DNA of 64,000 nucleotides. Origin: Octopus bimaculoides (Eukaryota). Shown here in pieces: positions 9,256-39,307 of the stretch. The DNA lies in contig NC_069005.1 in NCBI RefSeq assembly GCF_001194135.2, positions 690,521 through 754,520 on the forward strand, written 5' to 3'. Under the pieces are notes generated by a model. It worked only from the letters and a program-made list of their open reading frames with translations. It made no database searches and was not told the origin of the DNA. Within the stretch, counting starts at the first letter, position 1. Every line of letters starts with the position of its first letter. The position numbers and the translations under genes were made by a program.

Positions 9256-9960
9256 TTAAAAAAAAAAAGCGAAACATGTTTAAAATTTGACTAAATTTGA
9301 AAACATTTTTCAAAAACAAATTTAAAAAAAAAAAAGCCAAACCCACACAGAAAGAAAAAAAAAAAACAAATTGTTATTTTTTTTGTTTTTAATGGTGAGG
9401 TGAAGTGAAGAATGAACCAAGTAGAACAGAAATCTGTTTCACTTTTTTGGTGGTGGGAGATTTCGGNNNNNNNNNNNNNNNNNNNNNNNNNNNNNNNNNN
9501 NNNNNNNNNNNNNNNNNNNNNNNNNNNNNNNNNNNNNNNNNNNNNNNNNNNNNNNNNNNNNNNNNNNNNNNNNNNNNNNNNNNNNNNNNNNNNNNNNNNN
9601 NNNNNNNNNNNNNNNNNNNNNNNNNNNNNNNNNNNNNNNNNNNNNNNNNNNNNNNNNNNNNNNNNNNNNNNNNNNNNNNNNNNNNNNNNNNNNNNNNNNN
9701 NNNNNNNNNNNNNNNNNNNNNNNNNNNNNNNNNNNNNNNNNNNNNNNNNNNNNNNNNNNNNNNNNNNNNNNNNNNNNNNNNNNNNNNNNNNNNNNNNNNN
9801 TCCACTGTTTTAACACATCATGTCCGTATGGAAACCTAAAGGAAAAAAGAGAGAGAACAAAAAACTTGATTGCATTATTCTATCATCTAACGAATAGAAA
9901 GATGTTGTTTTACGAATTTATTGTATGTTTCTGCAAATGTTTTCCCTCTTATATTCTTTT

Positions 9961-10174
9961 CTACTCTAGGCACAAGGCCCAAAATTTCTGGGGAGGGGGG
10001 GGAGGCAGTTGATTAGATTGACACCAGTACGCAACTGGTACTTAATTTATTGACTCCTGAAAGGATGGAAGGCAAAGTCAACCTCGGCAGAATTTGAACT
10101 CAGAACGTAAAGACAGATGAAATACCGGTAAGCATTTTCCCCGGCATGCTAACCATTCAGCCAGCTCGCTGCCT
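9961..10174 (-). mobile_element. tRNA-derived SINE family 1 (representative copy)
   Basis: Minus strand reads ggcagcgagctggctgaatggttagca (A box) ... ctgagttcaaatt (B box) ... ataaattaagtaccagttg body. Other approximate copies at 10600-10810(-), 27046-27231(+), 27465-27655(+), 34300-34510(-), 36570-36720(+), 37400-37610(-), and clusters in SETD6 introns. Confidence 0.85.
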
Positions 10175-11087
10175 TTCCCCGCCTGATATTAAAACGCTTC
10201 AGACAGAGTCCTGTAGCGTGAGAACAATCTGTCACATTGTGGAAAGGGGATGGTAAGAGATTCAAACAAAGGCTATTGGCACGCACACAGGTGACATCTT
10301 AAAAGTGGAATATACATGAAGTCAGCTTAATATTCAATTAAACACATCAACATTGACTGTAGCAAAGGTGTACTGGTCTAGTAGTTAAGCTGTTGTACTC
10401 ACACGGATAAGGTTGTGGTTTCAATTCTTGAACTGGGCAGAATGTTGTGTTCTTGAGCAAAACACTTCATTTCATGTTGCTCCAGAAATGAGTTTCAAAA
10501 ATAACTGGGAAGTTCACCCTGTGACAGACTAGCTTCCCGTTCAGTTGGGGACAGTTGTAATTACCATGGAAACAGGGTTAAATCACAGTCTTATGAAATG
10601 TAGGGGTTTCAAATTTTGGTTACAAGGCTAGCAATTTCGGTGGGGAGTGTTGATTATATATCCCCCACCCCACGCCCCAGTACTCGACTGGTACTTAATT
10701 TGTCGATCCTGAATGGATGAAAAGCAACTTTGGCAGAATCTGAACATAAAGATGGACAAAATGGTGCTAACCATTTGCCCCTCAGCATGCTATTGATTCT
10801 GCAAGCTCGGACCTACATATATTGCTCAAGGGTAGAGAATTGCTATGAAGTGAATTAGCAGAGGCCACGTGGAAGTGCAAGTTCAATGTCTTTCATGCAG
10901 ACGACTTTATTGATGATAAATCACTTTGTTACGTATGAAAAGAATTGCATTTGGTTAATGCTGGGAAAGCCAGGAACCAGGATATGATGGTTATGAATTT
11001 ATATGGAGAGAGGGGGGGGGGGAAGTAAAAGAAAAATGAGAGAAAGAATAAAAAGAGAACTTTTAGAAAATAAATCATTTTTTGCTT

Positions 11088-14000
11088 CTACTTACGTCTT
11101 CTCTTAAACATGACAACCATTACACAGAGTTTCGTATGGGGTGACAAATCAACAGGAATAGCTTTCACAGGGTAGAAAGCTTTACCTTTCATCGTCTGTG
11201 ATTTCGGTCTCATCAAACTGCAACAAGAAAACAAAATCTCTCTGTATTAAGCTTGGGGAACAAAAAGGTAAAATTGGAAACTGAAGATTAACCTCCAATA
11301 TTTCTGGCAGATTCTATGATTTATAAAAACACTACTGAAGACTTCATCTTCCAAACTCTACAGTTTGTTTCTTTTACTTAAAAGTAAGCTTAACAAGTCC
11401 TTTGTCAGGTTGTTCCTCCTTCCCCTAAAGACAGACTGGGTAAGGAAGCATTTGAAAGTTGACCGTTTTAGCCATGGTTTTTGTGGTCAACAGGTTTGCT
11501 TTGCAACATGGCTTCAGGTTCAGTCCCACGGGGAAGAACCTTCTAATATAAACCTAGGGCCAATCAAAGGTGTGTGTGTGGGTGTGTTTACATGTGCTTA
11601 TATGGAAGTGTGGCAGTTGATGTGGTTGTCAGTTTCTGCTGTCAACAAATTGATTGATCACTTGAAAGAGACACAAAGGGCCTTCGAACCCGTGTGAAAT
11701 AAGTGATCCCCTATTTGGAGAACAGGTTAACGGTTGGCATCCAATCATTCAGAAAACGATCAGGGTGGTGGTGGGGGAACAGAATTTTAAAAACCACAAA
11801 AATAATAATAAAACGTATGAACAGAAGAAATAAGGCAGCTGAAAGAGTAGCAATGATGTAAATGCCCCGAACATCTAACAATAATAATAACTTACTCAGT
11901 GAAATTCTGAATGGCAGCCACAGGGTTACACGAGATGTAGATCACTCGATGGATGAAATGACAGCGGCGAAGGGCGTATATCACTTTGCTTTCTGTAAAA
12001 CAAGCAGAAGAAATAACAAGTTATTGAATAGCTATAGTTCCTGGTGAAAATTTAGGACAATATTCCAGTGTGATGTACAGATCCAGCAAACTGGGATAAA
12101 ATGTGCATTACGTTGATAAACACCAGATTGTCAGTCAAATTAATGACTGCAATTAAGATTATGATTTTTCATACCAACCCATCTCAGACTATCCTCCCTC
12201 ATTCTACTAAAAGAATTTCTTTCAACCCTTCAGTATTCAGATTAAATTGAATTATAAATTCTTATCTTTTGTCGTTTTGAATTAATCAGGCATTATCTTG
12301 TTCCTTTGAGATTTTGATGATGTGATTGTATATTTTTTTTGGAATGACATTGCAAGGTAAGTGTGAGAGACCCAATCTGGTTGGTTTGAACATAAAACAG
12401 GTAGAATATTGTAGCTGGACTTGGCCAGTTTAAATGCTAAATGAAAATGAAAGTATTTCGAGAGAAATCTAGCAGCAAAGGAGCTGCCAATGATTTTAGA
12501 ATCTACATCAATACTCCCCGCCCCCTCCTCACACTCAGGTCTTCTTGAATATGTTGCATTGTATACATCCAGGAATGACAAACTGATTGCTGTGCAGTGT
12601 TGATGGAAATACTAAACTGTAAAGGAGAGATGAATAATAAGAGCAGACGAGGAGACGGCATCATGCAGTGGCAGATTGTACAGCAAAACAATAAGGTGTG
12701 AGAGGCTGCATCTGGCCAGCTTCAAACTAAAACAATATTTGGGCCGGAAGTGATTGGTTTAAGAAACCCACGACGAGATAATCCAACATATTTTTTTTCT
12801 TTAAGATGGTAGGGTGTGACTTGAAGAACATTTGGCTGTTATTTCTTGCAAGTCAAGCAACCAAATAGCAAAATTAATTAGAAAAAAAAAAAAAAAAAAA
12901 TGAATACATAAACTTACGCATTTCAGCACAAGGCGAGTCGAGTACAGCTACTGCACTTTGACCTTTCAGCCATCGGTCTAACTGGTTGGTCACTTCCTCA
13001 GCCTTTGCATGGTGGAAGATAACATTAGTCACATCTAGAGAAGAAGAGAATAACAGGTTGTAGTCATCATCAAAATATGGATTTGTAGAAACACCAGAGT
13101 ATCAGTTGAAACATTTGACAGTTTGCAGCCCTTCACAACAAACCCCACTTTCTCTTCCCATGTTCGTTACAGCCAAGTTAATTAATTATTGACAGAAAGG
13201 TTCCACCACTGTAATTAAAGACAGGAATGGAACACTGATGCCCGATTCATTGACTTGAAGAGTCCAATTCCAGCCGAAGGATAAAGCTGCCAACAAGGCA
13301 GGGATTCTATCCACAGAGATTTCTTCCTCATTTACCCGAAACCATGGAAACCAGAGATAAACACAGTCCAGTGTGGACGTCCCTGATAAGAACAGTGTTT
13401 GCATTGTGACATCAATACCATATAAGAAAGTTCATTACAGAGTTTAAAACCAAATAATAGCTTAACGAACCCTTGGTAGCAACAGAAGAGACAACCTGGC
13501 TCAGAGTGGATTTGAACTTTTGTATCATTACAAACTGTGAATTTATATTGAAGTACAGAGCAAATTGTGGAGCTGTTAATTGCAACACAGAGTGTGTTGG
13601 TAGAGAGACATTTGGCAATGGTCAACTCAAATTTGGGAGAATGTAGCTTGATGCTATTTAAGTGTGTAGCCTTCTTTCGCAACACAGAATAATGCCACAT
13701 AAATCCAATGATCCAGTATTACACCATTTAATACTCCATCCACCCAACACAGCTCTTCCTGTCTTAAAAATGACCTTAAGAACAAGAAAGTTATTTACTA
13801 AATTCTTTCTTATTCCTAAAATTTACTGAATTAAAAAAGAGTGAATCTCAACAGAAATACAGTAAGAAGAAGGGAAAGACCTGCTCAAGAGCAATCATTT
13901 CCCTTCATCAAAACCTAATCCACATCTTTCTATACAGAAATCAACAACAACCTAGGACAGTGAGTGGTACAAAGGGATAAAGTGGGGCCAGGTAAATTTG

Positions 14001-15509
14001 AGGGGGGTCAAAAAAGTTATACAGTATTACTCTGGCACATAAGGGCTTTCAATCACCACCACCACCGTCATCATCATCATATCTAATGTCCATTTTCCTT
14101 ATGTTTGCCTGGATCAAACAGTTTATTGAGACAGATTCTTTATAATGGATGTCCTTCCTGTTGCCAATGAAGTTCATATTTCTTCACAGCCAGACATGTT
14201 TTTTCAGAAGAATGGAAACGAATGATGTTCATTTGCAACAATCATGTGATGTCAGGACAAGGAAACCCTAACATACATAACACACACACACGACGGATAT
14301 CTTTCAGTTTCCGTCAACCCAATCCAATAACAAGGCTTTGGTCATCCCAGGGCTATATTAGAAGACACTTGCCCAAGAAGTTACACATTGAGATTGAACC
14401 CAAAAACCATCTGATTTGGGAAGCAAGCTTCTCACCCACACACCCACATCAACAGACAAAAAGAAAACTAAGAAAAGATTGTATTTACTGTTTAATTCCG
14501 CATTCTTCTTTGCTTCCTCGATGTTGGCAGCCCACATATCAACAGCGACAACACTTTTTACCCTCTGAAACAAAGAGGAGAGTGTGAGAAGAATTAGGGG
14601 TACAAAGGAGAAGAAGAGAAAATAGTAGATGGGGTGGGGGGTGAGTGAGAAAGAGAATGACTAAGGTAATCAGTACGAGGGGGCTGAAGGTGGTCAGTTG
14701 GCAAAGTGACCAGCATGATCGAGGAAATGCTTGGTGTGGCATTTCTGGGATCTTTTTACATTCTGAAGTCAAATTCTGCTGAGGTCTACTTTGCCTTTCA
14801 TCCTTTCAGGGGTCAACAACATAAAAGTACCAGTTAAATACTGGGGTCAATGTAATCAAACCTTTCACCCTAAAATTACTGGCCTTGTGCCAGAATGTGA
14901 AACAATATTAGAAAAAAATCCATGCAACCAGCAGTTTTTCTTCTGCCGTTTCAATCCAATGGAAGCAAGTCTTTTTTTTTTTTAATTAATTACACTTTAT
15001 CAAAATGATTTGTTAATACTGAGTTCAACAGAAGGTAGTGGGATGGTAGAAACCACAGAGCACAATGGCTGAATGTACTGCAGCTCTTAATTTCAGGCCC
15101 CAAAATTCTGAGATCAAATCTAGTCAAAATTGACTTTGGAATATATTCTATCAGCTTTAATTCTTTAGCATTCAGCCCAAATATTTCACCTGTTTTGTGC
15201 TCAAGCCAGTTAGATCTGGCCTCTCACACCTATTCTACAATGTCATTCTAAAAATATACAATCACATCATCACCGTCTCAAAGCTGAGATTAATTCAAAA
15301 CAATGTGATTAAATAAGCATTACATTGGACAGAATAAATTCAAATTCCAAAGGATTAAATGAACGAAAGAGAGTTGTGTAAAGTGGTTTGGTATTAATGT
15401 ATCAACCTGGGTAGGTTTCAGGTTAGATTTTTAACAATGGAAACAGAACCAAGTTCGGTTGTTAGTTTTATGTGCATGCATGTATATTTGTGTATATACA
15501 GTATATAAG

Positions 15510-15548
<39 letters not shown>

Positions 15549-15775
15549 GTGTGTACATGTGTATATATATATATACAAGTAGAGTAATGCCTTGATATAC
15601 AAGTTAATTTGTACCCAGAGACAGCTCGTATGAAAACACGTAAACACTTGTAAACCTGGGGTCTCGTAAAGTGGGTACTTGTAAAGTGAGGTATTATTGT
15701 ATATATATATATTTCTGGGTACAAATGTATAAAGTATATGTGGGTGTATGTATAATTGTGTGTGTGCAAGTGCAC

Positions 15776-15815
<40 letters not shown>

Positions 15816-18800
15816 NNNNNNNNNNNNNNNNNNNNNNNNNNNNNNNNNNNNNNNNNNNNNNNNNNNNNNNNNNNNNNNNNNNNNNNNNNNNNNNNNNNNN
15901 NNNNNNNNNNNNNNNNNNNNNNNNNNNNNNNNNNNNNNNNNNNNNNNNNNNNNNNNNNNNNNNNNNNNNNNNNNNNNNNNNNNNNNNNNNNNNNNNNNNN
16001 NNNNNNNNNNNNNNNNNNNNNNNNNNNNNNNNNNNNNNNNNNNNCCAACCAACAGCAATGACAACAAAGTGATAGCTAACCTTGGCAAGACTCAGTGCCA
16101 CAGTGCCAGTGCTGCAGCAGATATTAAAGACAATGTTATTTGGTTCTTCCAAGCAAAGATCACCAACCATCGTGTAGAGGAGGGCTGCAGCAGGGTTGTT
16201 GACTAGAAAAAGAAAAAGTCTGTCATCATCATAAGTTTAACACATGTTTAAATACTAGTCAAAGGTTTAATTAAAATATAATGAACGTTCTTTAAAATAT
16301 GTTGGTAAGGGTTAGAGGAGTCAATTAGCCATTGTATTGCTATTCATTTCAAACTTTTTGTCAGATGCTTTCAACCTAATGTTTTAAGGCTTCGACCCAG
16401 TATTCCTCTGATATAATACAACCCATTTGAACCCATGACCTTGTGATATCAGTGATCACATTTGTGTTCAATAGTTATGAATGAGATTGACAGAACAAGT
16501 ACTGGACTTAATAGCATGAACAGAGGGGTCAGCGACTTTTACTAAAACGCTTCATTGACCACAGTCCAATGAGCAAAACAAGGAAGAACTCTGGTTAAGA
16601 CTGGAATTGGTGGAGAAGTAAAAACTTGTGGAGAGACTTACATGAGAAGAAAGTGTCAGGATAAATGTGGAAGCTAAGTTCTAGTAACACTTCTGTGATA
16701 CACTGAAACAGACACAAAAGAAAGTTCATTAAAATGTGACAGAGGTAATTGTAATTAAGAGAGAAGTCCTCTTGCTAGAACACAAAACTTAAATAATTAA
16801 CCCATACATTAGTATATTGCTACTGAAATACACTAGTTTTGTTTTAATTGGTTTTGAAAATAATGAAAAATTTAATAAAATAACTGTCATTATTATTAAG
16901 CTGGTGTTTGGAACTTAAATTAACAGGAAATTTTGAAGAAAGGCATTTTGTAGTGTGTCGCGGGTGAAAAACATGGCAAAGTATGCTTTCACCATTTTGT
17001 TGCCATATTTTTAGTAAAAGTACATAATGTGTGATTCAATTAATTTTGAAATAAGTTTTTTCTTGAACATAAATTAAGAAGAAATGTTGATGGGAAGTTT
17101 TAAGTTGGATCATTTTAAACAATAAGTTGATGTGATAGAAGCAATCTCTGGCAGGTTGATACCAAAAGAGTTTAATAGGGATAAGGGTTTATATAACAGG
17201 GATTAATTAAAAGACAAACTAATTTTAAATTTGATTAATTGATGAATTTCATCAAAGCCAAATTTTCTTTTTCTTTGCACAGATCAATTTTTTAAATTGT
17301 ACAAAAGATGGATCATACTAATTATTTAAAAAATATATATATTTATGCTAAATAAATGTTTTTTCCTCGTTAATACTTTAATTCTTGTAGGTTAATTTTT
17401 TCTGTTTTCAATTTCTCAAGATTAGTAATTGTAAAGAAAATGATAAAAAAAATAATCATGGAAAGAAGCCAATGTCTGAGCTAAAAGAAAACAAGCAACC
17501 GATGTTACCTTCTTGCCCCATAAATGTTCGTTGACAGCATGTTGTCTACAGCTGCCAAGTCTAGTGAAAGGAAAGAAAAACCGTTTAGAGATGAGAAGCA
17601 GAAGAGCTAAAACGAAATGGCTTAAAACTGGAGGTCAGGGTTAGTCGTTTACTTCATTAAAGATGAGGACATACAAAAAACAAAAGGAAAGATTTTTTTA
17701 AAAAATGAAAAGACAAAGATATAGAAGGAAAAATAGAATAAAAGACTATAAAAGAAAAGAATTGCAGGGGAAAAAAAGGAGAATAGAAAGAAAACCCACC
17801 AAAGTCTTCCCCTAGATACAAAGTAAGAAGAGTAAGCAAAAAGTAAGCCCCACACATTGTACAGAAGCAAAAGAAAATAAGGTGTGTGTGTGTATGGGGG
17901 TAGCAGAAACAGCTGTTTTGTTAACCCCCAAAGCTGCAAGCAAGAATCATATTCAAAGAACTTCTGAAGTAATACATTATTTCATTGCTCCACCGAATTT
18001 AAAAAGAGGATGAATTGTGTCAAGAGTTTAGAGATGCCGGAGCAGAGAGCCCCGTACGGATTAAGCAATTGCCTTCCTGAAAAAAGTTCAACTGAATTGG
18101 TTGAATACTAGACCAAAAGCCTTTGTGGCTTTTGGCCATCAAAGTATTCCCAATCCGAATGTCAAGAACCTGTTTGTCTTTAAATTATGCATTTCTCAGT
18201 TCCCTTATAATTAAGTTCTCTAATTTGAGGAGAATGCCAACCATTGTTGGTAAGTAGTATACTTAACCCAATGTAAAACTATTTGTCTTTATTCACGATA
18301 AAATGCCTACAATCATATCAATTATGTGTGAGTGTGTGAATATACACACAAAAAATAATAATAAAGAATGGAATTAGCTAATTATGTTTATTGTTTCATT
18401 AACTTCAATTAAACCAATTTTGTGTCATGACATTGCCATGTCATCAATGCATGTCTGTACACATATCATAATTTAACGTCCACCTTCCATGCTAACATGG
18501 GTGGGACAAATATTCATGTACGTCTTTCTGTTTGTGCTCCCCACTGCTTGACAATCAGTATCAGTTTGTTTGTCGTAACTTAGCAGTTCAGCAAAGGAGA
18601 CTAATAAAATAGGTACCTGACTTACAAAACAAACTAAAAAACTGGAGTCAATTCATTCAATTAAAACCCTCCAACATGGCACCCCAACAACCAATAAAAG
18701 ACAAAAAAAAAACATATATACAGGACAGGCTTCTTTCACTTTCTGTCTACTATCCAATCCACTCACAAGGCTTTGGTCAGTCCGAAGCTATAGCAGAAGA

Positions 18801-21800
18801 CACTTGCCCTAGGTGCCATGCAGTGGGATTGAACCCTAGAACCATGTGGTTGTGAGACAAGCTTCTTGCTATACAGGTACGTCTGTGCCTATGTATATCT
18901 GTAAACACCCAAACACGCTCACCTGTTACTCAAGCATCTGAAGTAGAGGGATGTCACGCCACACTGGACTCCATCACCATCAGAGAAATACTCCGTCATT
19001 GCAGCTTTCTCAGCATCCACTTCATCCTGCAAATGAAAAAAAAACAAACGACAAAATCAACTCGAGTCAGCTTTGTCTGGTCTGATTCTTCCTTCTTTTA
19101 TGAGTTTTCAAGAATCTAAAGTTTGAGTGAAAGATTTTTTTTTTTTGTTGCAAATATAATATAAAAACTATTTCTTGACTTAATTCAGCAGAGAGAGGCA
19201 AAACATCTGGTTCAAAGATGAAGGGGGAAAACCTTAAGAACCTTTTGACCACAGCACTCCCAAGATGAGCCTTTAAGACAAATAGATTTATGAAGAAAGG
19301 AAAAGAAATGTTACAAGAAATGGATAACAAAAAGGAGAGGGAGAAAGAGAGAGAGAGAGAGAGATCATCATTTGATATTCAGCTTTCCTTGCTTGGATGG
19401 GTCAGACTGAATTTGTTGAGGCAGATTTTCTAGGACCAAAAGACCTTCCTGTCACCAACTTTGACCTGTTTCCAAGCAAGGTCAACGGCCAGACATGTTT
19501 AACACAGAAGATTGGAAATGAATGACCTCACTTGTATGATGGTGATGTTTATTTACAATCAGTATTGTCATGTCGAGACAAAGGGGTACACACATACAAG
19601 CATCTATACATGACAGGCTTCTTTCAGTTTCCGTCTACCAAATTAACTCACAAGGCTTTGGCTGGCCTAAGATGCCACACTACAGGACTGAACCTGAAAC
19701 CATGCGGCTGGAGAGCAAGTTTCTTAACCGTAAAGCCACACACAAAAGACCAGGCAGAGAAAACAAACGACAAAAATACTTACATCTGAGAGAAACTGAG
19801 CATAAAAAACAGGAATGATCATGATATCGTTTTGGCTGGATGTGCGAACAATCAGCTGCCTCCAGTGACCATCATGTGTCTGGTCATTGTAAACATCGTA
19901 CTGGCTCTGACGGACATACTGTTGGAACACTTTGGCGATGAGTTTCATGGAATCTGGGAGATTGTCACAGGCGTACGGTTCGCCAACAACACTAGAACCA
20001 TCACGGTAACTGCCGACCCGAAAGCCAACTATTCTTTCATTAGTGCCATTTGAGCTGCTAGCAATGGTGAATTCAGATTTATTGCGATAAGCATTCAAAA
20101 CAGGTGAAGGCCTTATCTTTTCGATTTCACAAAGAACTCCAGAATGATTCTTCATCTGTTCCTTGAGCCAATTTCTCCATTTTGGACATGTGCGGTGAAC
20201 TTCCCAACTAAATTTCACCATGGCATCTCTGACATCAGAAGCTTTACGCTAAAAAAAACATTACAAAAAAGAAAAACAAGTAAATAAACAAAAATAAAAG
20301 AAAAACCCTCATTAGCATCGTTTAATTATTCTTTCTTATTTTTGATTATGTTTAATATTTTATCATGCTTTTGTGAAGAATGAGACCTGTAGTCCCTTGC
20401 TGTAAGCCAGTTCATGTAACCTATTCAAAGGGGAATGTTGCAATAATCAGTGAAAAAGGTAAGAGGACTGATGTGATAAAAGACATTAATACTAACACTA
20501 CAAAAACATTTTGGAAAGAAACCAAAGATGTCATGGTTGGCAAGGCAAGAAAAAAAAAAAAAAACATAATATACAAAGCAAGTTCTACCTACCCTGAGCT
20601 GATCTTCATATGGTACATCACAAAATGGCAATAAGGCTCGTTTAACCCTAAGAAAAAAAGGATAAATTAAAAATAGAATTATTAATCCCAAAGTCAAATG
20701 TCCATTAGATAGATCAGTGGTTTCCAACCTGTGATCCAAGGACTCCTGGTGGTCTGCAAGCTAAATTCAAAATATCACACACACAAACTAGACGACACGT
20801 GACCTGTTGGGTCACTGACGGTTCAGGTTATAAAACAATGGAACTGATTTCAACATTGAAATGAAAGTTAATTTTATGAGGATTCACTTAAATAATTCAA
20901 TTTGTTTGCGTCAGGTTTACAAGTTCATGTTTAAGGTTTTATTGATTATTTACAGCATCTAATAGAAATAGAACTTCCAAGATAAACTTGAACCCTAGTA
21001 ACAGCATTTATTTATGTTATATGTGCACAAAAAGGAATTGTTATACAATATAAATATAAAATTAATGGAAACAATTTTCCCATTTCAGAAGGTTGTTTGG
21101 GATGTGCTAGAATCTCCCTTGAATCACACACCCTTTCCTCTGAAAATATTTACAATTTTTTCTTTTTTCTACCAAAACAGCTCCTCCCATGGTTTTTAAG
21201 TTAAATCCTTAGGTACTCTGAATCCACAGCATCTAAATGGTATTCGTTGAAAATTTTGTTAAAAAGTATCCATTCTTCTGAAAGTTATGAGGTTACAAAG
21301 TCTGTGGGGTACACATCTGTAGTTATGCCAACAAAACTATCCAGTGTTCACAGTACAGAGCAACAAGTCCAGGTTTTACTGCTTAAATTTGTGGAACCCC
21401 CCCCCCCGCCAAAAAACCCCACATATCTCAGGAATCTGTGGTCCGATTTACGCGAACCTTGTTTTATTCCATTTGCATTCATATTTCAGAGCATTTTCCC
21501 ATCATGCACTGGTTTGACTGTATTAAATGACAGGCAGGCAAGCAATGAGAAGAATTTTAGTAGTATATAGATATACATACAAGGATAAGGATATTAAAAG
21601 GGGTCTATGGAGAAACACATTTAAATAAAAGGGGTCGTTGCTAGTGAAACGGTTGGGAATCACTGAGATAGATAGATATATGATGGTGGTAGGATGGTTG
21701 TGGAGTAGATAAAGTACCTATGTCATAATTATTCTAGGTACTCTACCTTATATACTCAACAAGGAGACAGTTATAGGATGTATCTATAATTTCCAGGCCA

Positions 21801-24499
21801 AAATGTGGACATTATGAACAGTTTCTGCTGTTTTTTTTGCATTACATTTTGAACTCAGGAATCACTTCCATTTACATGACTCCCACCGCCTCTAAATCTT
21901 AAATTTCATCAGCTTAAAAGTAAACAAAAACAGTAAAAATAAAAACATTAAATCAGAAATGAATTGACTGAAATTTCCACTTTGAAATGGCGTCAGACAT
22001 GAACAGAGTTCAATAAAATTCATTTTCTCCAGAATAAGTGTCAAAGTTTAGAAAACCTCCAAATAACCACAATCACCTTTGCATTAACCTAATCCACTGG
22101 ACAATATTGTTATCTGCTGAATAGTAAATCTAAAAGTGGGACTTAGAATAGAACAGCTGATAAGAGTACCAAAGTAAGAGTAAGGTGGTGGTGGGGGTGG
22201 GAGTGTCGATAGAAATGTGGCCAACATGAAGTGAAAGAACTTAATTTACAAGAATTAAAAACAAAAAATGGTTTTCACTTACTTTTCACCAGCTGTGGTA
22301 ATATCATCTGGGATGTCTATAGATATTTTACTTTTCTTGGACTCTGACACATCCTGAGATGACCCTGCAGCAAAACACCAGGACATTCGTTATTTAATGA
22401 TGGCAGTGGTGGTAGGGTTAGCAGAGACAGTCATCATCAACTGACAGCTTCTGAATGGATTTAGTAGATGGAAGCTGAAAGAAACCTGTATATGTGTGTG
22501 TGTGTGTGTGTGTGTCTTTGTCCTCCACCACTGCTTGACAACTGGAGCTGGTGTGCTTATGCCTCCGTAACTTAGTGGTTCAGCAAAAGAAACTAATAGA
22601 ACAAGTACCAGGCTTAAGAAATATAAGTCCTGGGGTCAATTTGTTCGACTAAAACCCTTCAAGGCGGTTGCCCCAGTATGGCTGCAGTCAAATGACTGCA
22701 ACAAGTAAAACGAAAAGAAAAAAAAAAGAGTTGGAAATAATTAGTGACCTGACATTTCTGTGAACTAATTTGTATTCTTAATGCCTCATCTTTCAGATTT
22801 ATTTTGAGTTTTGAGTTGTGAAAATGGTGCTTTGTCGTGTCTTGAGAATTCCTTGTTATTTTATTTCATGAATTTTATAAACAACAACTTTGCACAGAAA
22901 CACAACAAACATCTTAAAATGGAAAAGACTTACAGAACTAAAAATAAGTATACATATCGTATGAGCTCGTGTCACGTAAAAAGCACCCAGTCCACTCTGT
23001 AAAGCGGTTAGTGTTAGGAAGGGCATCCGACCTTAGAAACCAAACCAAATCAGGTGGGAATCTAGTACAGCCCTCCAGTTTGCCAGCTCTGGTCAAACCA
23101 TCCACCCTATGCCAGCATGGGAAACGGATGATAAATGATGACGATGACGATGATGACATTACCTCTAAACACTCAATCAAATGTCACTGATTATCACTGA
23201 GACAATGTCAACTAGACTGAAATATATCGGGTTACAAGGGCGGTGGGGAAAGGGTTTTAACATCAATGAATAAAGAATGAGATATAAAATATTTTACCTG
23301 CAACATCTTTACGCTTAGCAGACAGGTTCTCAAAGCTTTGATCAGATATCTATGGAAGAAAAGAAAAGAAATAAATAAAATTGGAAATTTGTAGGGAGTA
23401 AACAATGTATGCTTATTTCATGAACCAGGAAAGGATGAAAAGCAAAGATGATTGCAATAGAACTTGAACTCACATTCTAGAGAAAGCAAAACAATTGTTT
23501 TAATAAATTAAAACGTTTAATTCATTATCCAACCCTTTCTACCAATGCTTATAAGACGTATCACTACAACTGGCAGAGCGTCTCCATCCCTCCCTCCCTC
23601 TGTAGGTCTATGTACTCCCCAAAGACAACGTATTGCAGTTATCTCCCTTGGTTCGTGTTAGTCATCTGGAAGATGGTACTGTTGGTGACATACTTCTGCC
23701 ACTGTTCATTAGTGTGTGGGAATGTAATTAACTGATAGCTCATATGATGGTAAAGTCCTCACCCAGTCAATTATTTTAGTTAAAGTCTGCTAGCAACTCA
23801 ATACCAGCCACGTTACTAACGAGCAAATGGGGACCACAAAAGCCCGTTTCCATTTCAGCCCTTACTTCTGACGCCACGGCACAACTATTTGTGGTTCATA
23901 AATGTTATTGGAAAGGCACACATTAAGAATCGTTCTGTACATGGAAATAGCAAACACTTCTTATTTGCACATCACACATCATTCACCATACGTGCAAGTG
24001 TATTATACAACATCCTAGAGAAGATAGGTGTTTCTCTTCTCCTGCAAAACACCTTATCCTGTCCTCCTTTCCTGGCACAAAGCTCCCTCCTGCAATACTG
24101 CACCCTCAGTCAGTAAAAGGGTCTTATCTTGCAAGTCACTTGGTGACCCTACTAATGCTGGTACTATGAAAAACACCCAGTCCACACTCTGTAAAGTGGT
24201 TGGCATTAGGAAGAGCATCCAGCTGGAGAGACCTTGGCAAAGCAGACACTGGGGACTTAACACAGTCTTCAGGCTTATCAGGTCTTGTCGAACCATCCAA
24301 TCCATGTCTGCATGGAAAATGGACATTTGATGATGATGATGATGTGTAATAGGGAAAGACAATTCACACGACACTTCTCTCAACAGGATTCCAACATTTT
24401 ATTAGTCAAAATTGACAGAAATATCTAAAAACCACACAAAAGCATAACAGGTCTACTTACATTGCTGTTGTTGTTTCTGTTGGTTTCGGCCTCCATCAT
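11088..24499 (-). CDS. TRMT2A-like tandem paralog ('copy B'), 13 coding exons, 483 aa, no RRM, catalytic motifs degenerate (putative pseudo-enzyme)
   Basis: GT-AG exons in phase with no internal stop: 24499-24461 (MMEAETNRNNNSN), 23349-23298, 22364-22283, 20647-20593, 20248-19784, 19026-18923, 17560-17509, 16702-16642, 16202-16081, 14564-14489, 13034-12918, 11992-11896, 11217-11088 (TAG). Eight exons equal their copy-A homologs in length (55, 104, 52, 61, 122, 76, 117, 97 nt). Retains YRNKSEF, WRQLIVRTS and YISCNP. AATAAA on the minus strand at 10906-10911. The N-terminal exon assignment is less certain than the rest. Confidence 0.9.
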
Positions 24500-24599
24500 T
24501 GAAGTCTGAAATTAAATTAAAGGAAAATATGAAATTTGAAAGACAAAACCTCAAACAGGTATCTACAGTAGCACCCTTTATGCCTCTTCATTGTTCTGC

Positions 24600-25490
24600 A
24601 TCCATGAACAGTAACAATGTTGGGAACATCCTTAAATGGGGACATGGTAAGTTGGTGTCCTTCCACCCCCAAGTACAACATATATCAAAGCAAACAGGTT
24701 TCTACCTGTACCCTCTGGTTATGAACAACAACACAGCTAAACCTTTCGCAGGGGTTGCAACCACCACAAAAGCTCTCAACTTCTGGTGATCTCTCATTGA
24801 AGCTTCACAGACCATTGCCAAAAGGAATTTGTGATTTGTCCACCTTCCTACTTACTAAGACTTTGGTTTTTTTTTTGGTTAACTCTAAGGCCCTTTGATT
24901 CTAATCCTTGCTTCCACACCTGAAACTTCTTCTCTAGTTCTTATAGTGATTCAACTATAAGAGCAAGGTCATCAGCATAGAGGAGTTCCCAGGGGCAACC
25001 TGTCTTGGATTCCTGTTATTGCTTGGAGGACTATGATGAANNNNNNNNNNNNNNNNNNNNNNNNNNNNNNNNNCTATGATGAACAAGAGGGGGCTGAGGA
25101 CTGATCCTTGGTGAACCCCTAAATGTACCTCAAATTCTTCGCTATACTTGTTGCCAACCCTCACCTTACTGACAGCATCCCTGTACATGGCTTGTACAGC
25201 TCTCACCAACCATTCATATATCCCTAGTTTCTGCATTGACCACCAGATAAGGGATTGTCAGCAAAACCCAAGTACAGAGGTTTATCTTTGGAGAGATATT
25301 TCTCCTGCAGCAGTCGGACCAGAAATATAGCATCAGTGGTGCTTCTCCCTAGCATAAACCCAAACCACTTCTCATCTAAACTAATTCTCTCCCTAATTAG
25401 TTGGGCTATGACCGTCTCCGTAATTGGGTTTGATATAACTGGGCCCTCCACACTTCTCTATAGCCTTGTTTTTACAGTAGAAATCTTTAT
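24600..25490 (-). mobile_element. Degraded non-LTR retrotransposon (RTE-like LINE) reverse-transcriptase fragment
   Basis: Broken frames give FGFMLGRSTTDAIFLVRLLQEKY, LIWWSMQKLGIYEWLVRAVQAMY, GVHQGSVLSPLLFII and ELLYADDLAL (YADD at 24968-24979), with stops and frameshifts. Confidence 0.88.
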
Positions 25491-25584
25491 AAGAGCAAGG
25501 GAATGGCAGATTCAATGGAGAATAGCATAAGACGTAATCACACATTCATGCAAATGCATAAATCCAGATACATACACACACACA

Positions 25585-26720
25585 CCTGCACAGCTGAATC
25601 AAAACCGGAACTAAAGAAGAAATTTCAGGTATGGAAGCAAGGACTGGAGTCAAAAGGGGCCTTAGAGTTTATTCAGCAAAGGCCAAAGTATCGATAAGTA
25701 GGAAAACACAAATTACAGATCCCTTCAGGGAGATGGCCCTGTTCGATATGTAGAAAAGGTGTTAGGGTAAACTCCATACGGTGTACCCGGTGCAAGCTAT
25801 GGACACATAAGTGCAGTGGTATCACTGGAAAGTAGCATTTACATGTGGCAGATGTGAAATACATGAAACACCAAGAATGTACAAAAAAGAGAATCCCTCA
25901 AATGTCAGAATAGTAGACAGTTTCTGTTACTTAGGTGACAAGTTAGTAGTGGTGGAGGTTGTTCTGAAAGCATAGCTGCAAGAATAAGAATAGGCTGGGT
26001 AACGTTCAGAGAGCTACTACTTGTGTTAGTAAGAAAAGGCCTGTCCCTCAGAGTGAAAGGCAGATTGTATGATGCCTGTGGATGAACAGCCATGCTTCAT
26101 GGCAGTGAGACATGAACTGTGACTGTTGAGTGTACATAGAAAGGCTTGAAAGAAATGAAGCTAATATACTCTGCTGGATGGATAATATCAGTGTGCAAAT
26201 ACGTATTTGAGCTGAGAGAGAAAAACTGGGTATACATGGGCATCAGGTGTAGCGTGCAAGAGAGAAGACTGCACTGGTATGGCCATGTAATGCATATGAA
26301 TGAAGACAATTGCATCAAGAGGTACCAATCTCTAAATGTGGAGAGAACATGTAGAAGGGGTAAAGCTAGCAAGACATGGGACAAAGTGGTGAGAAAGGAT
26401 CTCCAGACGTTGGGCCTCACAGAAGGGATGACAAGAAACCAAGAGCCCTGATGGTTTGTTGAGCTTGAAAAGACATGTCAAGCTAAGTAAAATTGAGGCT
26501 GTCCTTGCATACAGGCAGGTTCCCCACATCCCTCTTCAGCTGAGTGTTTCTAATCTTGCGGGTGCCATGTAAAAGCATCCAGTACACACTCTGTAAAGTG
26601 GCTGGTGTTAGGAAGGGCAACCAGCTGTAGAAACCATGCCAAAGCAGACATGAAACCAGGGCAGTTCCTGTCAAACCGTCCAACCCATACCAGGGAAATG
26701 GAAAACGGACGTTAAATTAT
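25585..26720 (+). mobile_element. 5'-truncated RTE-like LINE: post-RT region, Cys-rich segment, C-terminus and 3' tail
   Basis: KKFQVWKQGLESKG, WPCSICRKGV...CTRCKLWTH, FCYLGD, ERRLHWYGHV, RRGKASKTWDKVVRKDL. Followed by the 3' tail (..gtccaacccatacc...ggaaaacggacgttaaa) shared with many short repeats in the window. Multiple stops. Confidence 0.85.
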
Positions 26721-27999
26721 GATAAACATATGCAATACAAACACAAAATGTTTTAATTACACATTTATATATACATAATATACATATATGCATACACACA
26801 CATAATGAACAACATAGCACGAATCAGAAGTACTGAAAAAAACAACTTAAATATTTTGACACTCGAAAGCTTTCTCTTTGCCTTTTGTATTGTAACTACT
26901 ACGGCTTCTGCACCCTCGTAACTCCTCCCTTCACTATACCCACTCTTTCTCCTACAATTCCCCACCCGCTATATCGACAGTTTACGAGGAAACATTAATT
27001 ATCGGGATATGTCTCATATCCGAGCCCTCGTCCTTATCATTATTCAGCAAAATGGTAGAATCGTTAGCACGATGGGCAAAAATCATGAGCGGCATTTCGT
27101 CTGTCTTCAAGCTCTGAGTTTAAATTTGGCCGGGGCCGATAAAATAAGAACCAGTTGAATACTGAGGATCGAAATGTAATCAATCTATCCCTTTCTCCCA
27201 ACGTACTGGCTTTGGGCCAAAATTTGAAATCAATATTTTTTTTTTCTGGCTTTACGTTCGGAGTTCAAATTCCGCTGAGGTGGACGTTACCTTTCATCTT
27301 TTCGGAATCGATCAAAGAAATACTTGTCAAATACTGGAAATCAATGAAATCAACTAGCCCCCACCCCCACCGCCTCACACAAAATTGCAGGCCTTGTGCT
27401 TGAAATTCTGGGGGAGGGGGCAACTCATTTTCATCATAATAGAAAGGGTTATTACTCTTACAAGGACAGGCAAACTAGCAGAATCGTTACCGCATTTTAC
27501 AAAATACTCGGTAGCATTTCATCTGGCTTTTTCATTCCGAGTTCAAACCCAGCTGAGGTCGACTTAGTTTTTGATCCTTTTGTCGGATACCAGTTAAGTG
27601 AACCTAATCGACTTAACTACCTTCCCTAAATTCAGGCCTTATGTCTAGAGTAGAAACAATTATAAAGATTGTGATTGTTAGGAATTTAGCCGAATTCGGA
27701 GGCTCTGTTTACTAATCTAGACACAATAAAAGGGGGAGTGTTTGTGTGTGTGGTGGGGGGACGTGTTTCTTTTACTTCAACCTTATATAAGTTGGATGAA
27801 AAGTGCTGTATTTCACTGTTGTTTCAAATACATAAACCAAGTAAGCACAGTGCTTGGTCTTTTTTTGCGAAAATAAAAATAACATTTTAACTTTTATTCT
27901 TGAGGCAAGTCGAAGACGTCTCTATGTGATTGTTCTAACTTACGAGAAATAGCAGCCAAATCTCCTTCAAAACATACACTAGTCTCAAAGCAAGAAAGA

Positions 28000-29400
28000 A
28001 GAACGGATAATGTAGTCTTGAGAAGACGGAGTGGTCACGGTTGGAAAAAAATCTGATGATAAGTCTGAGTGTCGTGGTGTCTCAGGCAGGTAGACAAGAG
28101 AAACCTGCTTCAGTGTCTTTAAGAATTAAGGCGACATATGTGGTGGATATTCTATTAACATGAAAAAGACTGGCTCTCGTAATAATAATAATTGTTGTTG
28201 TGATGGAAGCAACAAAATCTGGTCTGTTTTTACGAGGCGGAAGTAAGAGGATTGAGTGACATTCATGCTTGTCACGGGCAAGAATATCAAAAACCAAAGA
28301 TGAACATAAGGTAACAAATTTATAACTGAACGAAACAAAGAATGTGTGGTAGTCATGCCTTTTCGACAACAACAACAATAATAACGGTAACTAAAATATG
28401 CCAATACCAACAGGACACGAAGAAGAAGCGGCGGCGGTAAAGGTATTTGGTTGAATTAAGGAGATTTTAGCTTGGAATTTTAATGGTTTTTCTTTTTTTG
28501 TGGGATTTAGAGAAAAATACAAATAACAGACTAGAGACGAAATAGAATTCTATCTCTCTCTCTCTCAAATAATAAATTAAATTAAACACAAAACAAACAA
28601 GAGCATCGTTGTTGTTGTCCCGTCTTTTACAACCAAACTGTTCTGGGTTTGGTGAATGGAACGGAATACAGGTAAATGGATAATTATATTAATTAAAGAC
28701 AAGACGAACAATTAAGGGTTAGTCGAGAGGATGGAAGTAAAGAACATTAAGCATTTGAAGGCGACAAAAAAATATTAATTAATAACGGATACAAGTGGTT
28801 AGTTCTTACATTAATGTCGTCTTGCAATAATCGACTACAACAAAAAACGGAGCCATTCACTGCGGAGACACCGCGCTGACGAGTGAGGTGGTGGTGGCGG
28901 CGGTGATAGTGACTACATAGACACATACACATATATAGAGAGAGACACACACATACACGTGTGTTGGACTTTTACACACAATCGCCTCGATGAGAATTTA
29001 TATAAACATACATTAACAGAATATTTTTAAATTTAATTATTTTCAAATAAAAATGTAAAAGGAAAAAAAATGATACTTACAAATGAGAAACATTTCGGTA
29101 CATTTATTATGATAATTATATATATATTTTAATATAATTATTGTAATGATTATTTGAAATGTTCGTATTTTTTGTTTTGATATTATTTACATATTTTTTT
29201 TCCAATTATTATATCGTTTACTGCTGCAACTATTATTTCTATACTATTACGAAACTAAGACTCTATCATTAAACTTAATTACATTCCCGCGCTACACCTC
29301 CTCACAACGAGGCTCCACTTAATCCTCGAGCCCAGCCTCGTTGTCGTCACCGGAAGTAAATCTTGCAGCACACTAAATAAATAAAAATGTCAATAATTTT
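28000..29400. promoter_or_regulatory. CpG-enriched candidate promoter / first exon of the TRMT2A-like paralog
   Basis: Local CpG and GC enrichment (gcggcggcgg, ccgcgctgacg). ETS-type CCGGAAGT at 29350-29357 and GCGGAAGT at 28237-28244. Candidate minus-strand first exon ending at a GTAAGA donor (28809-28804). Copy B's start exon has an acceptor at 24506-24507 and so needs an upstream UTR exon. Confidence 0.35.
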
Positions 29401-37700: not shown

Positions 37701-39266
37701 ATGTTCATAGTTTGCTGCTTGCCGACAGCTTGATTGTCTGCAAAGAAACGGAAATAGAAATCAATAATGCATCAATAATAGAAATCCTTTCTGTTACAGG
37801 CACAAGGCCTGATATTTGAGAGGAGGGCGAAACTTACTTCTTGGTGACGCAATTGAAAAATAATGATGTTACACCACATATTTTTCCTTCACCTTCACTG
37901 AAAAATTCTTTCAATGCCTCTTTCTCAGCTTGAATCTCCTCCTGGAAAAAAAAGAGAAAAGGAAACATCCAAGTTAATCAACAGCAACAGAGGTAAGTTT
38001 ATTAGAGGAACACCATATAAGGAAACAAAGACAGCAGGAGTATGGGGGGGGGGGGTGTCTAAGACAAAGAAAAAATGCGTACGTATATGTGTGTATATTT
38101 TAAACGAGCTGAGCCTGTCCCATGTAGACGTGATTTCTCATACCTGTAATTTATGTGGGGCAAATTGACAGGACTGAGTGTTGGCTAGACCGTCTCACAG
38201 ATGTTCAAATCACACCAGGATCCACTTCATTTCAGGGTCAATAAATAAGATTCCGCATAACGGATCATATTCAACTCATTTCTTTCCAATCAAATTCCAG
38301 ATACAACAAACACGAGCAAGGCATCTGATGGTGGATCCGACAGAGCAGTGGATAGATTGCTTTGCAATAATCATTCTGGCTCTTGACAATCTGAGATGCC
38401 AGCTTTGTCTTTGATTCTTCTAAGGTTAACAAAACACAAGACCAGTCCTGGACTGGAGCCAATCTTTCCCTTTCTAACTTTTTGTCAGTCTATCTCTCTT
38501 CTGGAAGAAACTGTCTGTTATCAGGCCCAGGGAAGGATGGCTCCACCAAGTCTACAACTGTTCAAGACACATCATAAATGGCAACGGCACTGCTACAACT
38601 CCATCAAGAAGTAGAAAGCTCAAAGCAAGACAGGGCAAGATATGAAGAAAGTAAGGCCTTATTAAGGCTGGTTCCAAAGAATTTTTTTGGCTTCCTTCCG
38701 GCAAATAAGTCTATTCAGTCAGCAGCAACATATCCATTATCATCATTTTAACATCTCCTTTGCCATGCTGGCATGGGTTGGACAGATTCTAAACCCCTGA
38801 GCCTCCAATCTTGTAATCAGTCTCATAAAACAACTACAAACTCTTCAAACAAGTTTCAAGAACTCACGTCGGAAAGCTCAACAGAATGAAACTCAATAAT
38901 AGCCATCACACCCCCTCTGCTGCTGGTCCTCACAGTCAACTGCCTCCAATATCCTTCGTGAGTTTGGGCATCATAAACGGAATATTTACTTTGACGCACA
39001 TATTCTTGGAAAACCTTAGGAAGAAATTTAAAAAGAAAAAAACAATATTTAAACAAATAATTCAATTCAATGGAAGGAGATGCTATCAAAATAGACATTA
39101 ATTTCCAGAGAAACATATGCAAGCCTATTGCACAGGTAATAACATGGAAGGTGTTTTTTCAAGAGAAAAATGAACAAACTAAACAAGAATGAAAATTATG
39201 GCACATTTAAAACGAGTATAAGATGATGAAGAAAAAGAAAAGTAACAAATTATAAATAATAATGAG

Positions 39267-39307
<41 letters not shown>

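What the first reader, a model, noticed from the sequence alone, without database searches (positions are those of the whole stretch)
11896..11992. 80-nt perfect identity between paralogs confined to the catalytic-Cys exon (gene conversion or nucleotide-level constraint)
Copy B 11896-11992 and copy A 33118-33214 differ at only 5 of 97 nt and share an uninterrupted 80-nt run (gtgaaattct...gaagggcgta), about 26 codons with no synonymous change. The next exon shows synonymous differences at most comparable codons, and the flanking introns share little beyond the splice signals. The tract encodes [26 protein letters not shown], the nucleophile motif. Inference: recent, exon-limited gene conversion, possibly cDNA-mediated like the intron loss, or an RNA-level element. 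This also means retention of the Cys in copy B may be passive rather than selected.
Basis: partly seen in the sequence, partly recalled or inferred. Interest (0 to 1): 0.7.

Follow-up and report, generated by a model that had tools for sequence, protein, structure and literature searches.

The report
Gene conversion between octopus TRMT2A paralogs
Two old, neighbouring copies of an octopus tRNA-methylating enzyme gene differ almost everywhere, yet share one nearly identical 97-base exon because one copy was used to overwrite the other there; this is a clear but ordinary case of gene conversion.

Summary
The window is Octopus bimaculoides. It holds two tandem TRMT2A (tRNA m5U54 methyltransferase) paralogs on the minus strand, 21.2 kb apart.

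- **The signal.** The 97-nt catalytic-Cys exons (B 11896-11992, A 33118-33214) differ at 5 nt and share an 80-nt identical run. Every other exon is saturated at synonymous sites (pS about 0.82, amino-acid identity 44-72%). The next-longest identical run is 11 nt.
- **Not constraint.** Orthologues show normal synonymous divergence in this exon. The Argonauta hians B copy has the same peptide but 15/97 silent changes, and cuttlefish codons differ freely. There is no Rfam match and no unusual fold.
- **Not an artefact.** Independent O. sinensis and O. vulgaris assemblies show the same two copies. Their A and B exons differ at 7-8/97 nt, and the 5' boundary falls at the same place.

The cause is therefore short-tract interlocus gene conversion. 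It postdates the Octopus/Argonauta split and is about as old as the bimaculoides/vulgaris split, or it recurs.

Nothing supports a cDNA template. The claim that B keeps its Cys passively is not supported:
- B evolves under strong purifying selection (dN/dS about 0.02).
- B is the more likely donor.

B has lost its RRM, SAM-binding motif residues and the catalytic Glu. This is a new member of a known kind, of modest interest.

The parts
11896..11992 (-). Copy B (TRMT2A-like, XP_014773283.1) catalytic-Cys exon, 97 nt, codons 453-483 plus split codons at both ends
   Evidence: Exact mapping of P0002 onto the window; splice sites seen
33118..33214 (-). Copy A (canonical TRMT2A) catalytic-Cys exon, 97 nt
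   Evidence: Splice-junction search guided by cuttlefish TRMT2A; same exon in the O. sinensis A protein P0160
11899..11978 (-). 80-nt run in B identical to A: 26 whole codons, [26 protein letters not shown], plus 2 nt
33121..33200 (-). 80-nt run in A identical to B
11883..12000 (-). Largest alignable A/B segment in B (118 nt, 95%): exon plus 13 nt of the downstream intron and 8 nt of the acceptor tract
33105..33222 (-). Largest alignable A/B segment in A
9810..28932 (-). Copy B coding span (15 coding exons). No RRM. Fused exon 19784-20248. Degenerate motifs NICCSTGT, LDSPCAEM and HTKLCVMV, with SCNP kept
31784..45854 (-). Copy A coding span. RRM plus an intact methyltransferase domain ([24 protein letters not shown]) and a C-terminal [12 protein letters not shown] repeat interrupted by a 10-N gap
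11094..11216 (-). Next (downstream) exon of B, not converted (pS 0.745 against A 32131-32254)
12919..13032 (-). Previous (upstream) exon of B, carrying the degenerate motif IV, not converted (pS 0.91, amino-acid identity 0.44 against A 33605-33721)

Best explanation
The near-identity is the footprint of short-tract non-allelic (interlocus) gene conversion between two tandem, same-orientation TRMT2A paralogs that are otherwise anciently diverged.

**Inferred mechanism.** A break in one copy was repaired using the other copy, 21 kb away, as template. This copied about 80-115 bp. The tract begins 14 nt inside the Cys exon and ends at, or a few bases beyond, its donor site.

**Why this exon (inferred).**
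- It encodes the nucleophile loop, the one segment where the constraints on both proteins are compatible, so a converted allele survives selection.
- Conversion anywhere else would carry B's degenerate SAM-binding or general-base motifs into A, or the reverse.
- Once homogenised, the tract is the only stretch similar enough to recombine again. It may therefore persist as a small island of concerted evolution.

**Shown.**
- The tract exists and is statistically extreme.
- Synonymous sites are homogenised.
- The event postdates the Octopus/Argonauta split and is shared by three Octopus species.
- Both genes are under purifying selection.

**Inferred.**
- One event near the base of Octopus, or recurrent events.
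- Direction B to A, at roughly two in three.
For: 1. A-B divergence per exon in O. bimaculoides is pS 0.56-0.91 everywhere (0.82 overall, saturated). In the focal exon it is 2/20.3 synonymous sites, and 0/17.7 in the core. O. sinensis and O. vulgaris show the same pattern: 0.76-0.81 elsewhere against 0.11-0.19 in the core.
2. Run-length and codon-identity tests give 0/20000 shuffles and P = 9e-9.
3. Phylogenetic incongruence. B orthologues of Octopus and Argonauta share derived features: the fused exon, loss of the RRM, and the DSPC and LCVMV motifs. They group with 100% bootstrap. Yet in the core, Octopus A is 0-3 nt from Octopus B, while Octopus B is 9-10 nt from Argonauta B.
4. There is no extra synonymous constraint. 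Orthologous pS in this exon is 0.095 (B) and 0.142 (A), against gene-wide values of 0.125 and 0.13. By my own count from the sequences printed, only 5 of 19 same-amino-acid codons match cuttlefish.
5. Four paralog-specific differences at exon positions 3, 4, 11 and 14 are conserved in all three Octopus species, which sets a common 5' boundary.
6. Independent assemblies (GCA_006345805.1, GCA_951406725.2) reproduce both copies.
7. Direction:
   - The Argonauta B peptide is identical to the Octopus tract at all 26 core codons and all 31 full codons of the exon. Elsewhere B-B amino-acid identity is about 0.87 and A-B about 0.55.
   - Exon GC3 is 0.60, against 0.38 in the rest of A (p = 0.019) and 0.44 in the rest of B (not significant).
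Against: - No read-level data. The O. bimaculoides assembly has many N gaps and looks short-read based, so bubble-popping could have erased one to three real differences. The perfect 80/80 may then be slightly overstated; the long-read relatives show 3/80.
- Conversion between sequences only about 66% identical is mechanistically hard. This favours a tract that never diverged (continuous concerted evolution) over a single late event, and these data cannot separate the two.
- Direction is uncertain. Synonymous sites between Octopus and Argonauta are saturated (pS 0.84), so nucleotides cannot polarise the event, and no copy A from a non-Octopus octopod was available.
- All 5 core substitutions fall on the sinensis/vulgaris side and none on the bimaculoides side. 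This is only weakly unusual (P about 0.03-0.09).
Confidence: 0.88

Rival explanations
1. Nucleotide-level purifying selection on an RNA element (splicing enhancer, RNA-editing duplex or structured RNA) keeps the same bases in both paralogs.
For: Identity of the exon with Argonauta B at same-amino-acid codons is somewhat above background: 18/31 and 20/29 against about 0.40 (P = 0.05 and 7e-4). Cephalopods are known, from general knowledge, to constrain sequence around RNA-editing sites.
Against: - Orthologous synonymous divergence in this exon is ordinary between Octopus species.
- 9 of 17.7 synonymous sites differ from Argonauta B.
- By my own count from the sequences, only 5 of 19 same-amino-acid codons match cuttlefish.
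- No Rfam family matches anywhere in the window.
- The exon folds no better than shuffled sequence (z = +0.45).
- Constraint cannot make two sequences that are saturated elsewhere converge on identity.
Confidence: 0.03
2. Assembly artefact: one exon copy, or its perfect identity, was created by repeat collapse or haplotype merging in the O. bimaculoides assembly.
For: The window has 2215 N in nine gaps, which is typical of a short-read scaffold. An 80-nt shared core is longer than typical k-mers. O. bimaculoides shows 0/80 where its relatives show 3/80.
Against: - Both exons sit in unique, non-alignable introns and carry 4-5 paralog-specific bases.
- The same two-copy arrangement, the same paralog-specific bases and a near-identical core occur in two independent assemblies of other species.
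- At most this rival accounts for the last one to three differences, not for the phenomenon.
Confidence: 0.05
3. cDNA-mediated (retro) conversion: a reverse-transcribed mRNA of one paralog served as the repair template, as is suspected for B's intron loss.
For: B has lost four introns in one block, which is compatible with an old cDNA-templated event. The tract lies almost wholly in coding sequence.
Against: - A cDNA template should carry the conversion across exon junctions into the adjoining exons or remove introns. Both neighbouring exons are saturated (pS 0.75 and 0.91) and both introns are present.
- The tract begins 14 nt inside the exon.
- Identity in O. bimaculoides continues for 10 nt past the donor, then one mismatch and two more matches.
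- The intron loss is shared with Argonauta, so it is far older than the conversion.
Confidence: 0.04

Closest known systems
Interlocus (non-allelic) gene conversion between tandem duplicates, as in primate gamma-globin HBG1/HBG2, alpha-globins and red/green opsins (general knowledge)
   Same: Tandem same-orientation paralogs tens of kb apart. A short tract is homogenised, silent sites included, while flanks diverge. The tract is shared among related species and locally GC-enriched.
   Different: The partners here are far more diverged (silent sites saturated, about 55% protein identity) and functionally unequal. The tract is very short (about 80-115 bp) and confined to one motif-coding exon.
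Conversion from a pseudogene or non-functional paralog into the active gene, as in CYP21A1P to CYP21A2, GBAP1 to GBA1 and SBDSP1 to SBDS (general knowledge)
   Same: The probable donor is the catalytically degenerate copy and the recipient is the active enzyme gene next to it. The tracts are short.
   Different: B is not a pseudogene. It has intact reading frames, dN/dS about 0.02, and is conserved from Octopus to Argonauta. The transferred segment keeps the catalytic Cys and is presumably harmless. The direction is inferred, not proven.
Proposed gene conversion in octopod tandem clusters: reflectin and tyrosinase in Argonauta argo (PMC9635652, read)
   Same: Same animal group, tandem duplicates, and concerted evolution invoked for them.
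   Different: Those cases involve tracts over 1 kb among young, similar copies. This is a sub-exon island in an old pair.
TRMT2A / Trm2 / TrmA / RlmCD family of m5U methyltransferases (PF05958)
   Same: Both copies match PF05958 above its cutoff. The converted exon aligns to the 'ISCN' nucleophile loop of RlmCD.
   Different: B lacks the RRM and has replaced near-invariant residues of motif I (D to N, G to S), motif IV (DPPR to DSPC) and the general base (E to V).

Membership tests
Interlocus gene conversion tract | Two paralogous loci in the same genome, both really present | tested here: met
   A and B lie 21,222 bp apart in the window. The same pair occurs in O. vulgaris (L005) and O. sinensis (L004 and L006). 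No read-level check was possible.
Interlocus gene conversion tract | A segment whose divergence is significantly lower than in the flanking homologous sequence | tested here: met
   An 80-nt identical run against a next-longest run of 11; 0/20000 shuffles reach it. Focal pS is 0.098 against 0.82 elsewhere.
Interlocus gene conversion tract | Homogenisation includes synonymous sites and is not explained by constraint | tested here: met
   27/29 identical codons against 65/155 elsewhere. Orthologous pS in the exon is normal. Argonauta and cuttlefish differ freely at silent sites.
Interlocus gene conversion tract | Phylogenetic incongruence: the tract groups paralogs within a lineage while the flanks group orthologues | tested here: met
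   Core distances are A-B 0-3 within Octopus against 9-10 for Octopus B to Argonauta B. Outside the exon B (Octopus + Argonauta) is a 100% clade.
Interlocus gene conversion tract | GC enrichment of the tract (biased gene conversion) | tested here: inconclusive
   GC3 is 0.60 in the exon, against 0.38 in the rest of A (p = 0.019) and 0.44 in the rest of B (p = 0.14). Only 30 codons are involved.
Interlocus gene conversion tract | Ongoing exchange: shared polymorphism between the copies | not testable with these tools
   No population or read data. The only hint is position 17, where O. vulgaris B carries the A-type T and O. sinensis B does not; it is a CpG site, so parallel mutation is also possible.
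cDNA-templated conversion | Tract respects or crosses exon-exon junctions and excludes intron sequence | tested here: not met
   The tract starts 14 nt inside the exon, adjacent exons are unconverted and introns are retained. Identity continues for 10 nt past the donor (then one mismatch and two more matches) in O. bimaculoides.
TRMT2A/TrmA m5U methyltransferase (PF05958), copy A | PF05958 match; SAM motifs I and IV; nucleophile Cys; general-base Glu; N-terminal RRM | tested here: met
   The window's copy A shows [19 protein letters not shown] and HCELV in the alignment. The Glu aligns with the residue that differs E/Q between RlmCD entries 5xj1 and 5xj2. The Pfam scores come from the O. sinensis A orthologue P0160: PF05958 68.9 bits and RRM_1 24.6 bits; the window's own A protein was not scanned. 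Activity was not assayed.
TRMT2A/TrmA m5U methyltransferase (PF05958), copy B | The same catalytic and cofactor residues | tested here: not met
   B matches PF05958 (45.9 bits), but only up to profile position 329 of 357, and has no RRM. Motif I is NICCSTGT, motif IV is LDSPCAEM and the general base is replaced by Val; the same holds in Argonauta B. B is homologous to the family but probably not an active member. The nucleophile SCNP is kept.

The most novel reading that the evidence does not exclude
Copy B may be an octopod-wide, strongly conserved pseudo-methyltransferase. It has no RRM, a degenerate SAM site and no general base, yet keeps the nucleophile loop.

On this reading the Cys exon is an island of concerted evolution maintained by selection since the duplication. 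The reason would be that A and B must present the same tRNA T-loop-engaging loop, for example if B acts as a non-catalytic tRNA binder or chaperone, or as a partner or competitor of A. The conversion would then be a mechanism that keeps an enzyme and its dead paralog matched at one functional surface, rather than an accident.
Probability: 0.12. Interest if true: 0.55.

Novelty: new member of a known kind. Interest (0 to 1): 0.3.

Why it matters
- **For annotation and evolutionary analysis.** This exon must be masked in any A/B tree, dating or dN/dS estimate, because it would falsely make the paralogs look young.
- **As a textbook-quality example.** A tract of about 100 bp can persist between genes that are otherwise saturated. 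A degenerate paralog can probably overwrite the catalytic exon of the working enzyme without harm.
- **For tRNA biology.** The more interesting by-product is copy B itself: a TRMT2A-derived protein conserved from Octopus to Argonauta under strong purifying selection. It appears unable to methylate yet keeps the catalytic cysteine loop, which makes it a candidate non-catalytic tRNA-binding factor worth testing.

Tried and rejected
1. **RNA element.** An Rfam scan of the whole window found no matches. Folding of the exon gave z = +0.45. Rejected.
2. **Polarising the direction with silent sites against Argonauta B.** This failed because Octopus-Argonauta silent sites are saturated (pS 0.84). Argonauta B also has a strong GC3 shift (0.75, and 0.90 in the fused exon).
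3. **Finding a copy A from a non-Octopus octopod.**
   - The 10 kb upstream of Argonauta B holds no A exons.
   - The first protein search returned no Octopus A at all.
   - A short 114-aa query returned only 16 candidates and nothing useful.
   - Only the third search surfaced O. sinensis A.
   - No A from other octopods was obtained.
4. **Exact look-up of isoform P0135.** It failed; the longest isoform, P0160, worked.
5. **Order of A, B and decapod TRMT2A.** Unresolved by NJ bootstrap (46% against 37%), so the duplication is dated only as before the Octopus/Argonauta split and within cephalopods.
6. **Divergence times from the literature.** The paper searched gave none in its text, so ages are given in dS units only.
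7. **Other conversion tracts between A and B.** None found; the next identical run is 11 nt. One exon has a somewhat low A-B pS (0.34-0.56) but 54% amino-acid identity, so it was not pursued.
8. **Failed scripts.** Searches were also failed or empty scripts.
Full report
**What is in the window**

The window is Octopus bimaculoides. [quoted passage not shown] I call this gene copy B.

A second TRMT2A gene, copy A, lies immediately upstream on the same strand.
- Its coding exons run from 45854 to 31784.
- I modelled them with canonical GT-AG junctions, guided by cuttlefish TRMT2A (P0001, whose cluster includes Acanthosepion pharaonis TRMT2A).
- The model agrees with the annotated O. sinensis copy A protein (P0160, XP_029650874.1, 740 aa).

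Copy A has the canonical features.
- In the window's own sequence the motifs are intact: [19 protein letters not shown] and HCELV.
- Its O. sinensis orthologue P0160 scores RRM_1 at 24.6 bits and PF05958 at 68.9 bits. The window's A protein itself was not scanned.

Copy B differs in several ways.
- It has no RRM.
- Its PF05958 match (45.9 bits) stops at profile position 329 of 357.
- It replaces residues that are near-invariant in 57 outgroup TRMT2A proteins: motif I becomes NICCSTGT, motif IV becomes LDSPCAEM, and HTKHCELV becomes HTKLCVMV.
- That Glu aligns with the position that differs E/Q between the RlmCD entries 5xj1 and 5xj2. I read it as the general base, on the general knowledge that E-to-Q trap mutants are used for this family.
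- One B exon (19784-20248) corresponds to five A exons, so four introns have been lost.

**The observation**

- The two exons differ at 5 nt, at exon positions 3, 4, 11, 14 and 95.
- They share an 80-nt identical run (B 11899-11978, A 33121-33200).
- The alignable segment is 118 nt at 95%.
- Beyond about 12 nt of acceptor tract and about 13 nt after the donor, the introns do not align.

**How unusual it is**

- Per-exon Nei-Gojobori estimates between A and B give pS 0.56-0.91 in every other homologous exon. The overall value is 0.82, which is saturated; amino-acid identity is 0.44-0.72 and dN is 0.34.
- In the focal exon only 2 of 20.3 synonymous sites differ. In the 26-codon core the figure is 0 of 17.7.
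- In the 933-nt codon alignment the next-longest identical run is 11 nt, and no shuffle out of 20000 (by site or by codon) reaches 80.
- Restricting to codon pairs that encode the same amino acid removes the effect of protein conservation: 27/29 identical here against 65/155 elsewhere, P = 9e-9.

**Constraint or conversion?**

I fetched the orthologous loci:
- Argonauta hians B (P0003, locus L001);
- O. sinensis B (L004) and O. sinensis A (L006);
- O. vulgaris A 3' half plus B (L005);
- a cuttlefish transcript (L002).

Argonauta B shares B's derived features: the fused exon, the missing RRM, and the DSPC and LCVMV motifs. It groups with Octopus B at 100% bootstrap outside the focal exon. The duplication therefore predates the Octopus/Argonauta split.

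In the 80-nt core, however, the distances run the other way.
- Octopus A and B differ at 0 (bimaculoides), 3 (sinensis) and 3 (vulgaris) positions.
- Octopus B and Argonauta B differ at 9-10 positions, all silent.
- By my own count from the sequences printed, cuttlefish shares only 5 of 19 same-amino-acid codons.

Orthologous silent divergence in this exon is ordinary:
- ObiB-OvuB pS 0.095 against 0.125 gene-wide;
- ObiA-OsiA pS 0.142 against 0.13 gene-wide.

No Rfam family matches and the exon folds no better than shuffles. What remains is interlocus gene conversion.

**Artefact?**

I could not examine reads. Two independent assemblies of other species contain both copies in the same arrangement. 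They have the same four paralog-specific bases at the 5' end of the exon and a near-identical core. The phenomenon is real.

The window does have nine N gaps. Haplotype merging in a short-read assembly could have removed a few real A/B differences, so the perfect 80/80 in O. bimaculoides deserves a read-level check.

**Timing**

- The species dS between O. bimaculoides and O. sinensis/vulgaris is 0.137-0.142.
- A-B core dS is 0.19 in O. sinensis and 0.12 in O. vulgaris. That is about the age of the species split.
- The common 5' boundary in all three species fits one event in their common ancestor.
- All five core substitutions lie on the sinensis/vulgaris side.
- Zero differences in O. bimaculoides has P about 0.08 under a single event at the split. 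A later re-homogenisation in that lineage is possible but not demonstrated.
- 'Recent' should be read as within the genus, not as within the species.

Because partners only 66% identical recombine poorly, an attractive alternative is that this tract never diverged, i.e. a persistent island of concerted evolution. That predicts A near-identical to B in Argonauta as well. I could not test it: no A exons lie within 10 kb upstream of Argonauta B and no Argonauta A protein surfaced.

**Direction**

Nucleotides cannot polarise the event, because Octopus-Argonauta silent sites are saturated (pS 0.84). Two weaker lines favour B as donor.
- The Argonauta B peptide equals the Octopus tract at all 26 core codons. 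Elsewhere B-B identity is about 0.87 and A-B about 0.55. By my own rough calculation (not a tool result), 26/26 is hundreds of times more likely for a B-derived tract than for an A-derived one, unless both copies already shared this peptide.
- Exon GC3 (0.60) departs from the rest of A (0.38, p = 0.019) but not from the rest of B (0.44).

I put B to A at about two in three.

**cDNA template?**

Nothing supports it.
- The tract starts inside the exon.
- The neighbouring exons are saturated.
- Both introns remain.
- In O. bimaculoides identity continues for 10 nt into the downstream intron, followed by one mismatch and two more matches.
- B's intron loss is shared with Argonauta and is much older.

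**Is B's cysteine retained passively?**

This is not supported.
- B has dN 0.003 and dS 0.137 between Octopus species (ratio about 0.02).
- Its dN against Argonauta is 0.088.
- Across the 31 full codons of the Cys exon the peptide is unchanged between Octopus and Argonauta, although the exon carries 15 silent substitutions.
- If anything, A received the sequence.

**Mechanism and meaning**

The anatomy fits ordinary double-strand-break repair that uses the tandem paralog as template and leaves a short non-crossover tract. Selection would tolerate such an event only in the one exon where both proteins need the same sequence.

Gene conversion among octopod tandem duplicates has been proposed before, for reflectins and tyrosinases (PMC9635652). 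The kind is therefore known, and this is a clean new example.

The more intriguing by-product is copy B. It is a conserved, probably non-catalytic TRMT2A derivative that keeps the nucleophile loop.

**Verdict**

- Observation: confirmed.
- Novelty: new member of a known kind.
- Interest: modest.

Noticed in passing
window 19784-20248 (-) versus 41312-41218, 40735-40687, 40138-40075, 39426-39320, 39014-38868 (-); L001 14741-15229: One B exon equals five A exons, so four adjacent introns have been lost. Argonauta B has the same fusion, which means the loss predates the Octopus/Argonauta split. A block loss of this kind is compatible with an old cDNA-templated event.
   Followed up: partly
window 16081-16200, 12919-13032, 11094-11216 (-): Copy B replaces near-invariant TRMT2A residues: motif I D to N and G to S, motif IV DPPR to DSPC, and the general-base Glu to Val. 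It also lacks the RRM. It nevertheless evolves under very strong purifying selection (dN/dS about 0.02) and is conserved in Argonauta, so it is a probable pseudo-enzyme.
   Followed up: partly
window 31812-32169, N gap at 32051-32060: The C-terminal tail of copy A is an 18/36-nt tandem repeat encoding [12 protein letters not shown] units. The 10-N gap inside it shifts the reading frame. This probably explains why no O. bimaculoides A protein appears in the database cluster that holds O. sinensis and O. vulgaris A.
   Followed up: partly
L005 39237 and L005 7034, 7074; L004 26471; L006 27060: O. vulgaris and O. sinensis are almost identical (dS 0.004-0.009), yet each O. vulgaris copy has one of its very few differences inside this exon. 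B position 17 carries the A-type T at a CpG site; A position 57 gives Ile to Val, restoring the ancestral YVSCNP. This may reflect ongoing micro-conversion, repair-associated mutation, or chance.
   Followed up: no
L001 10001-36847 (Argonauta hians B): Argonauta B has GC3 of 0.75 overall and 0.90 in the fused exon, against 0.44 in Octopus B. This strong compositional shift saturates silent-site comparisons.
   Followed up: no
L005 1-5596 and 7029-9817: The O. vulgaris annotation splits copy A into two gene models (529 aa and 197 aa). The Cys exon falls in the second model.
   Followed up: no
window 10067-10143, 14755-14811, 27251-27307, 34405-34481, 36601-36657, 37496-37572, 57565-57641, 58714-58770 and others: An interspersed repeat family of about 100-200 nt (copies 70-85% alike, both orientations) is scattered through the introns of both genes and the flanks. 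It looks SINE-like and is unrelated to the converted tract.
   Followed up: no
window 37838-37941 (A) versus 18922-19026 (B): This exon has a lower A-B silent divergence than the others (pS 0.34 in O. sinensis, 0.46-0.56 in O. bimaculoides) despite 54% amino-acid identity. This could be chance or the worn trace of a much older exchange.
   Followed up: no
L004 31606-38703, L005 44349-51455 (opposite strand, downstream of B): The downstream neighbour in O. sinensis and O. vulgaris is a WD40 protein with a DUF1899 domain. I did not check whether it lies in the gap-rich first 9 kb of the window.
   Followed up: no
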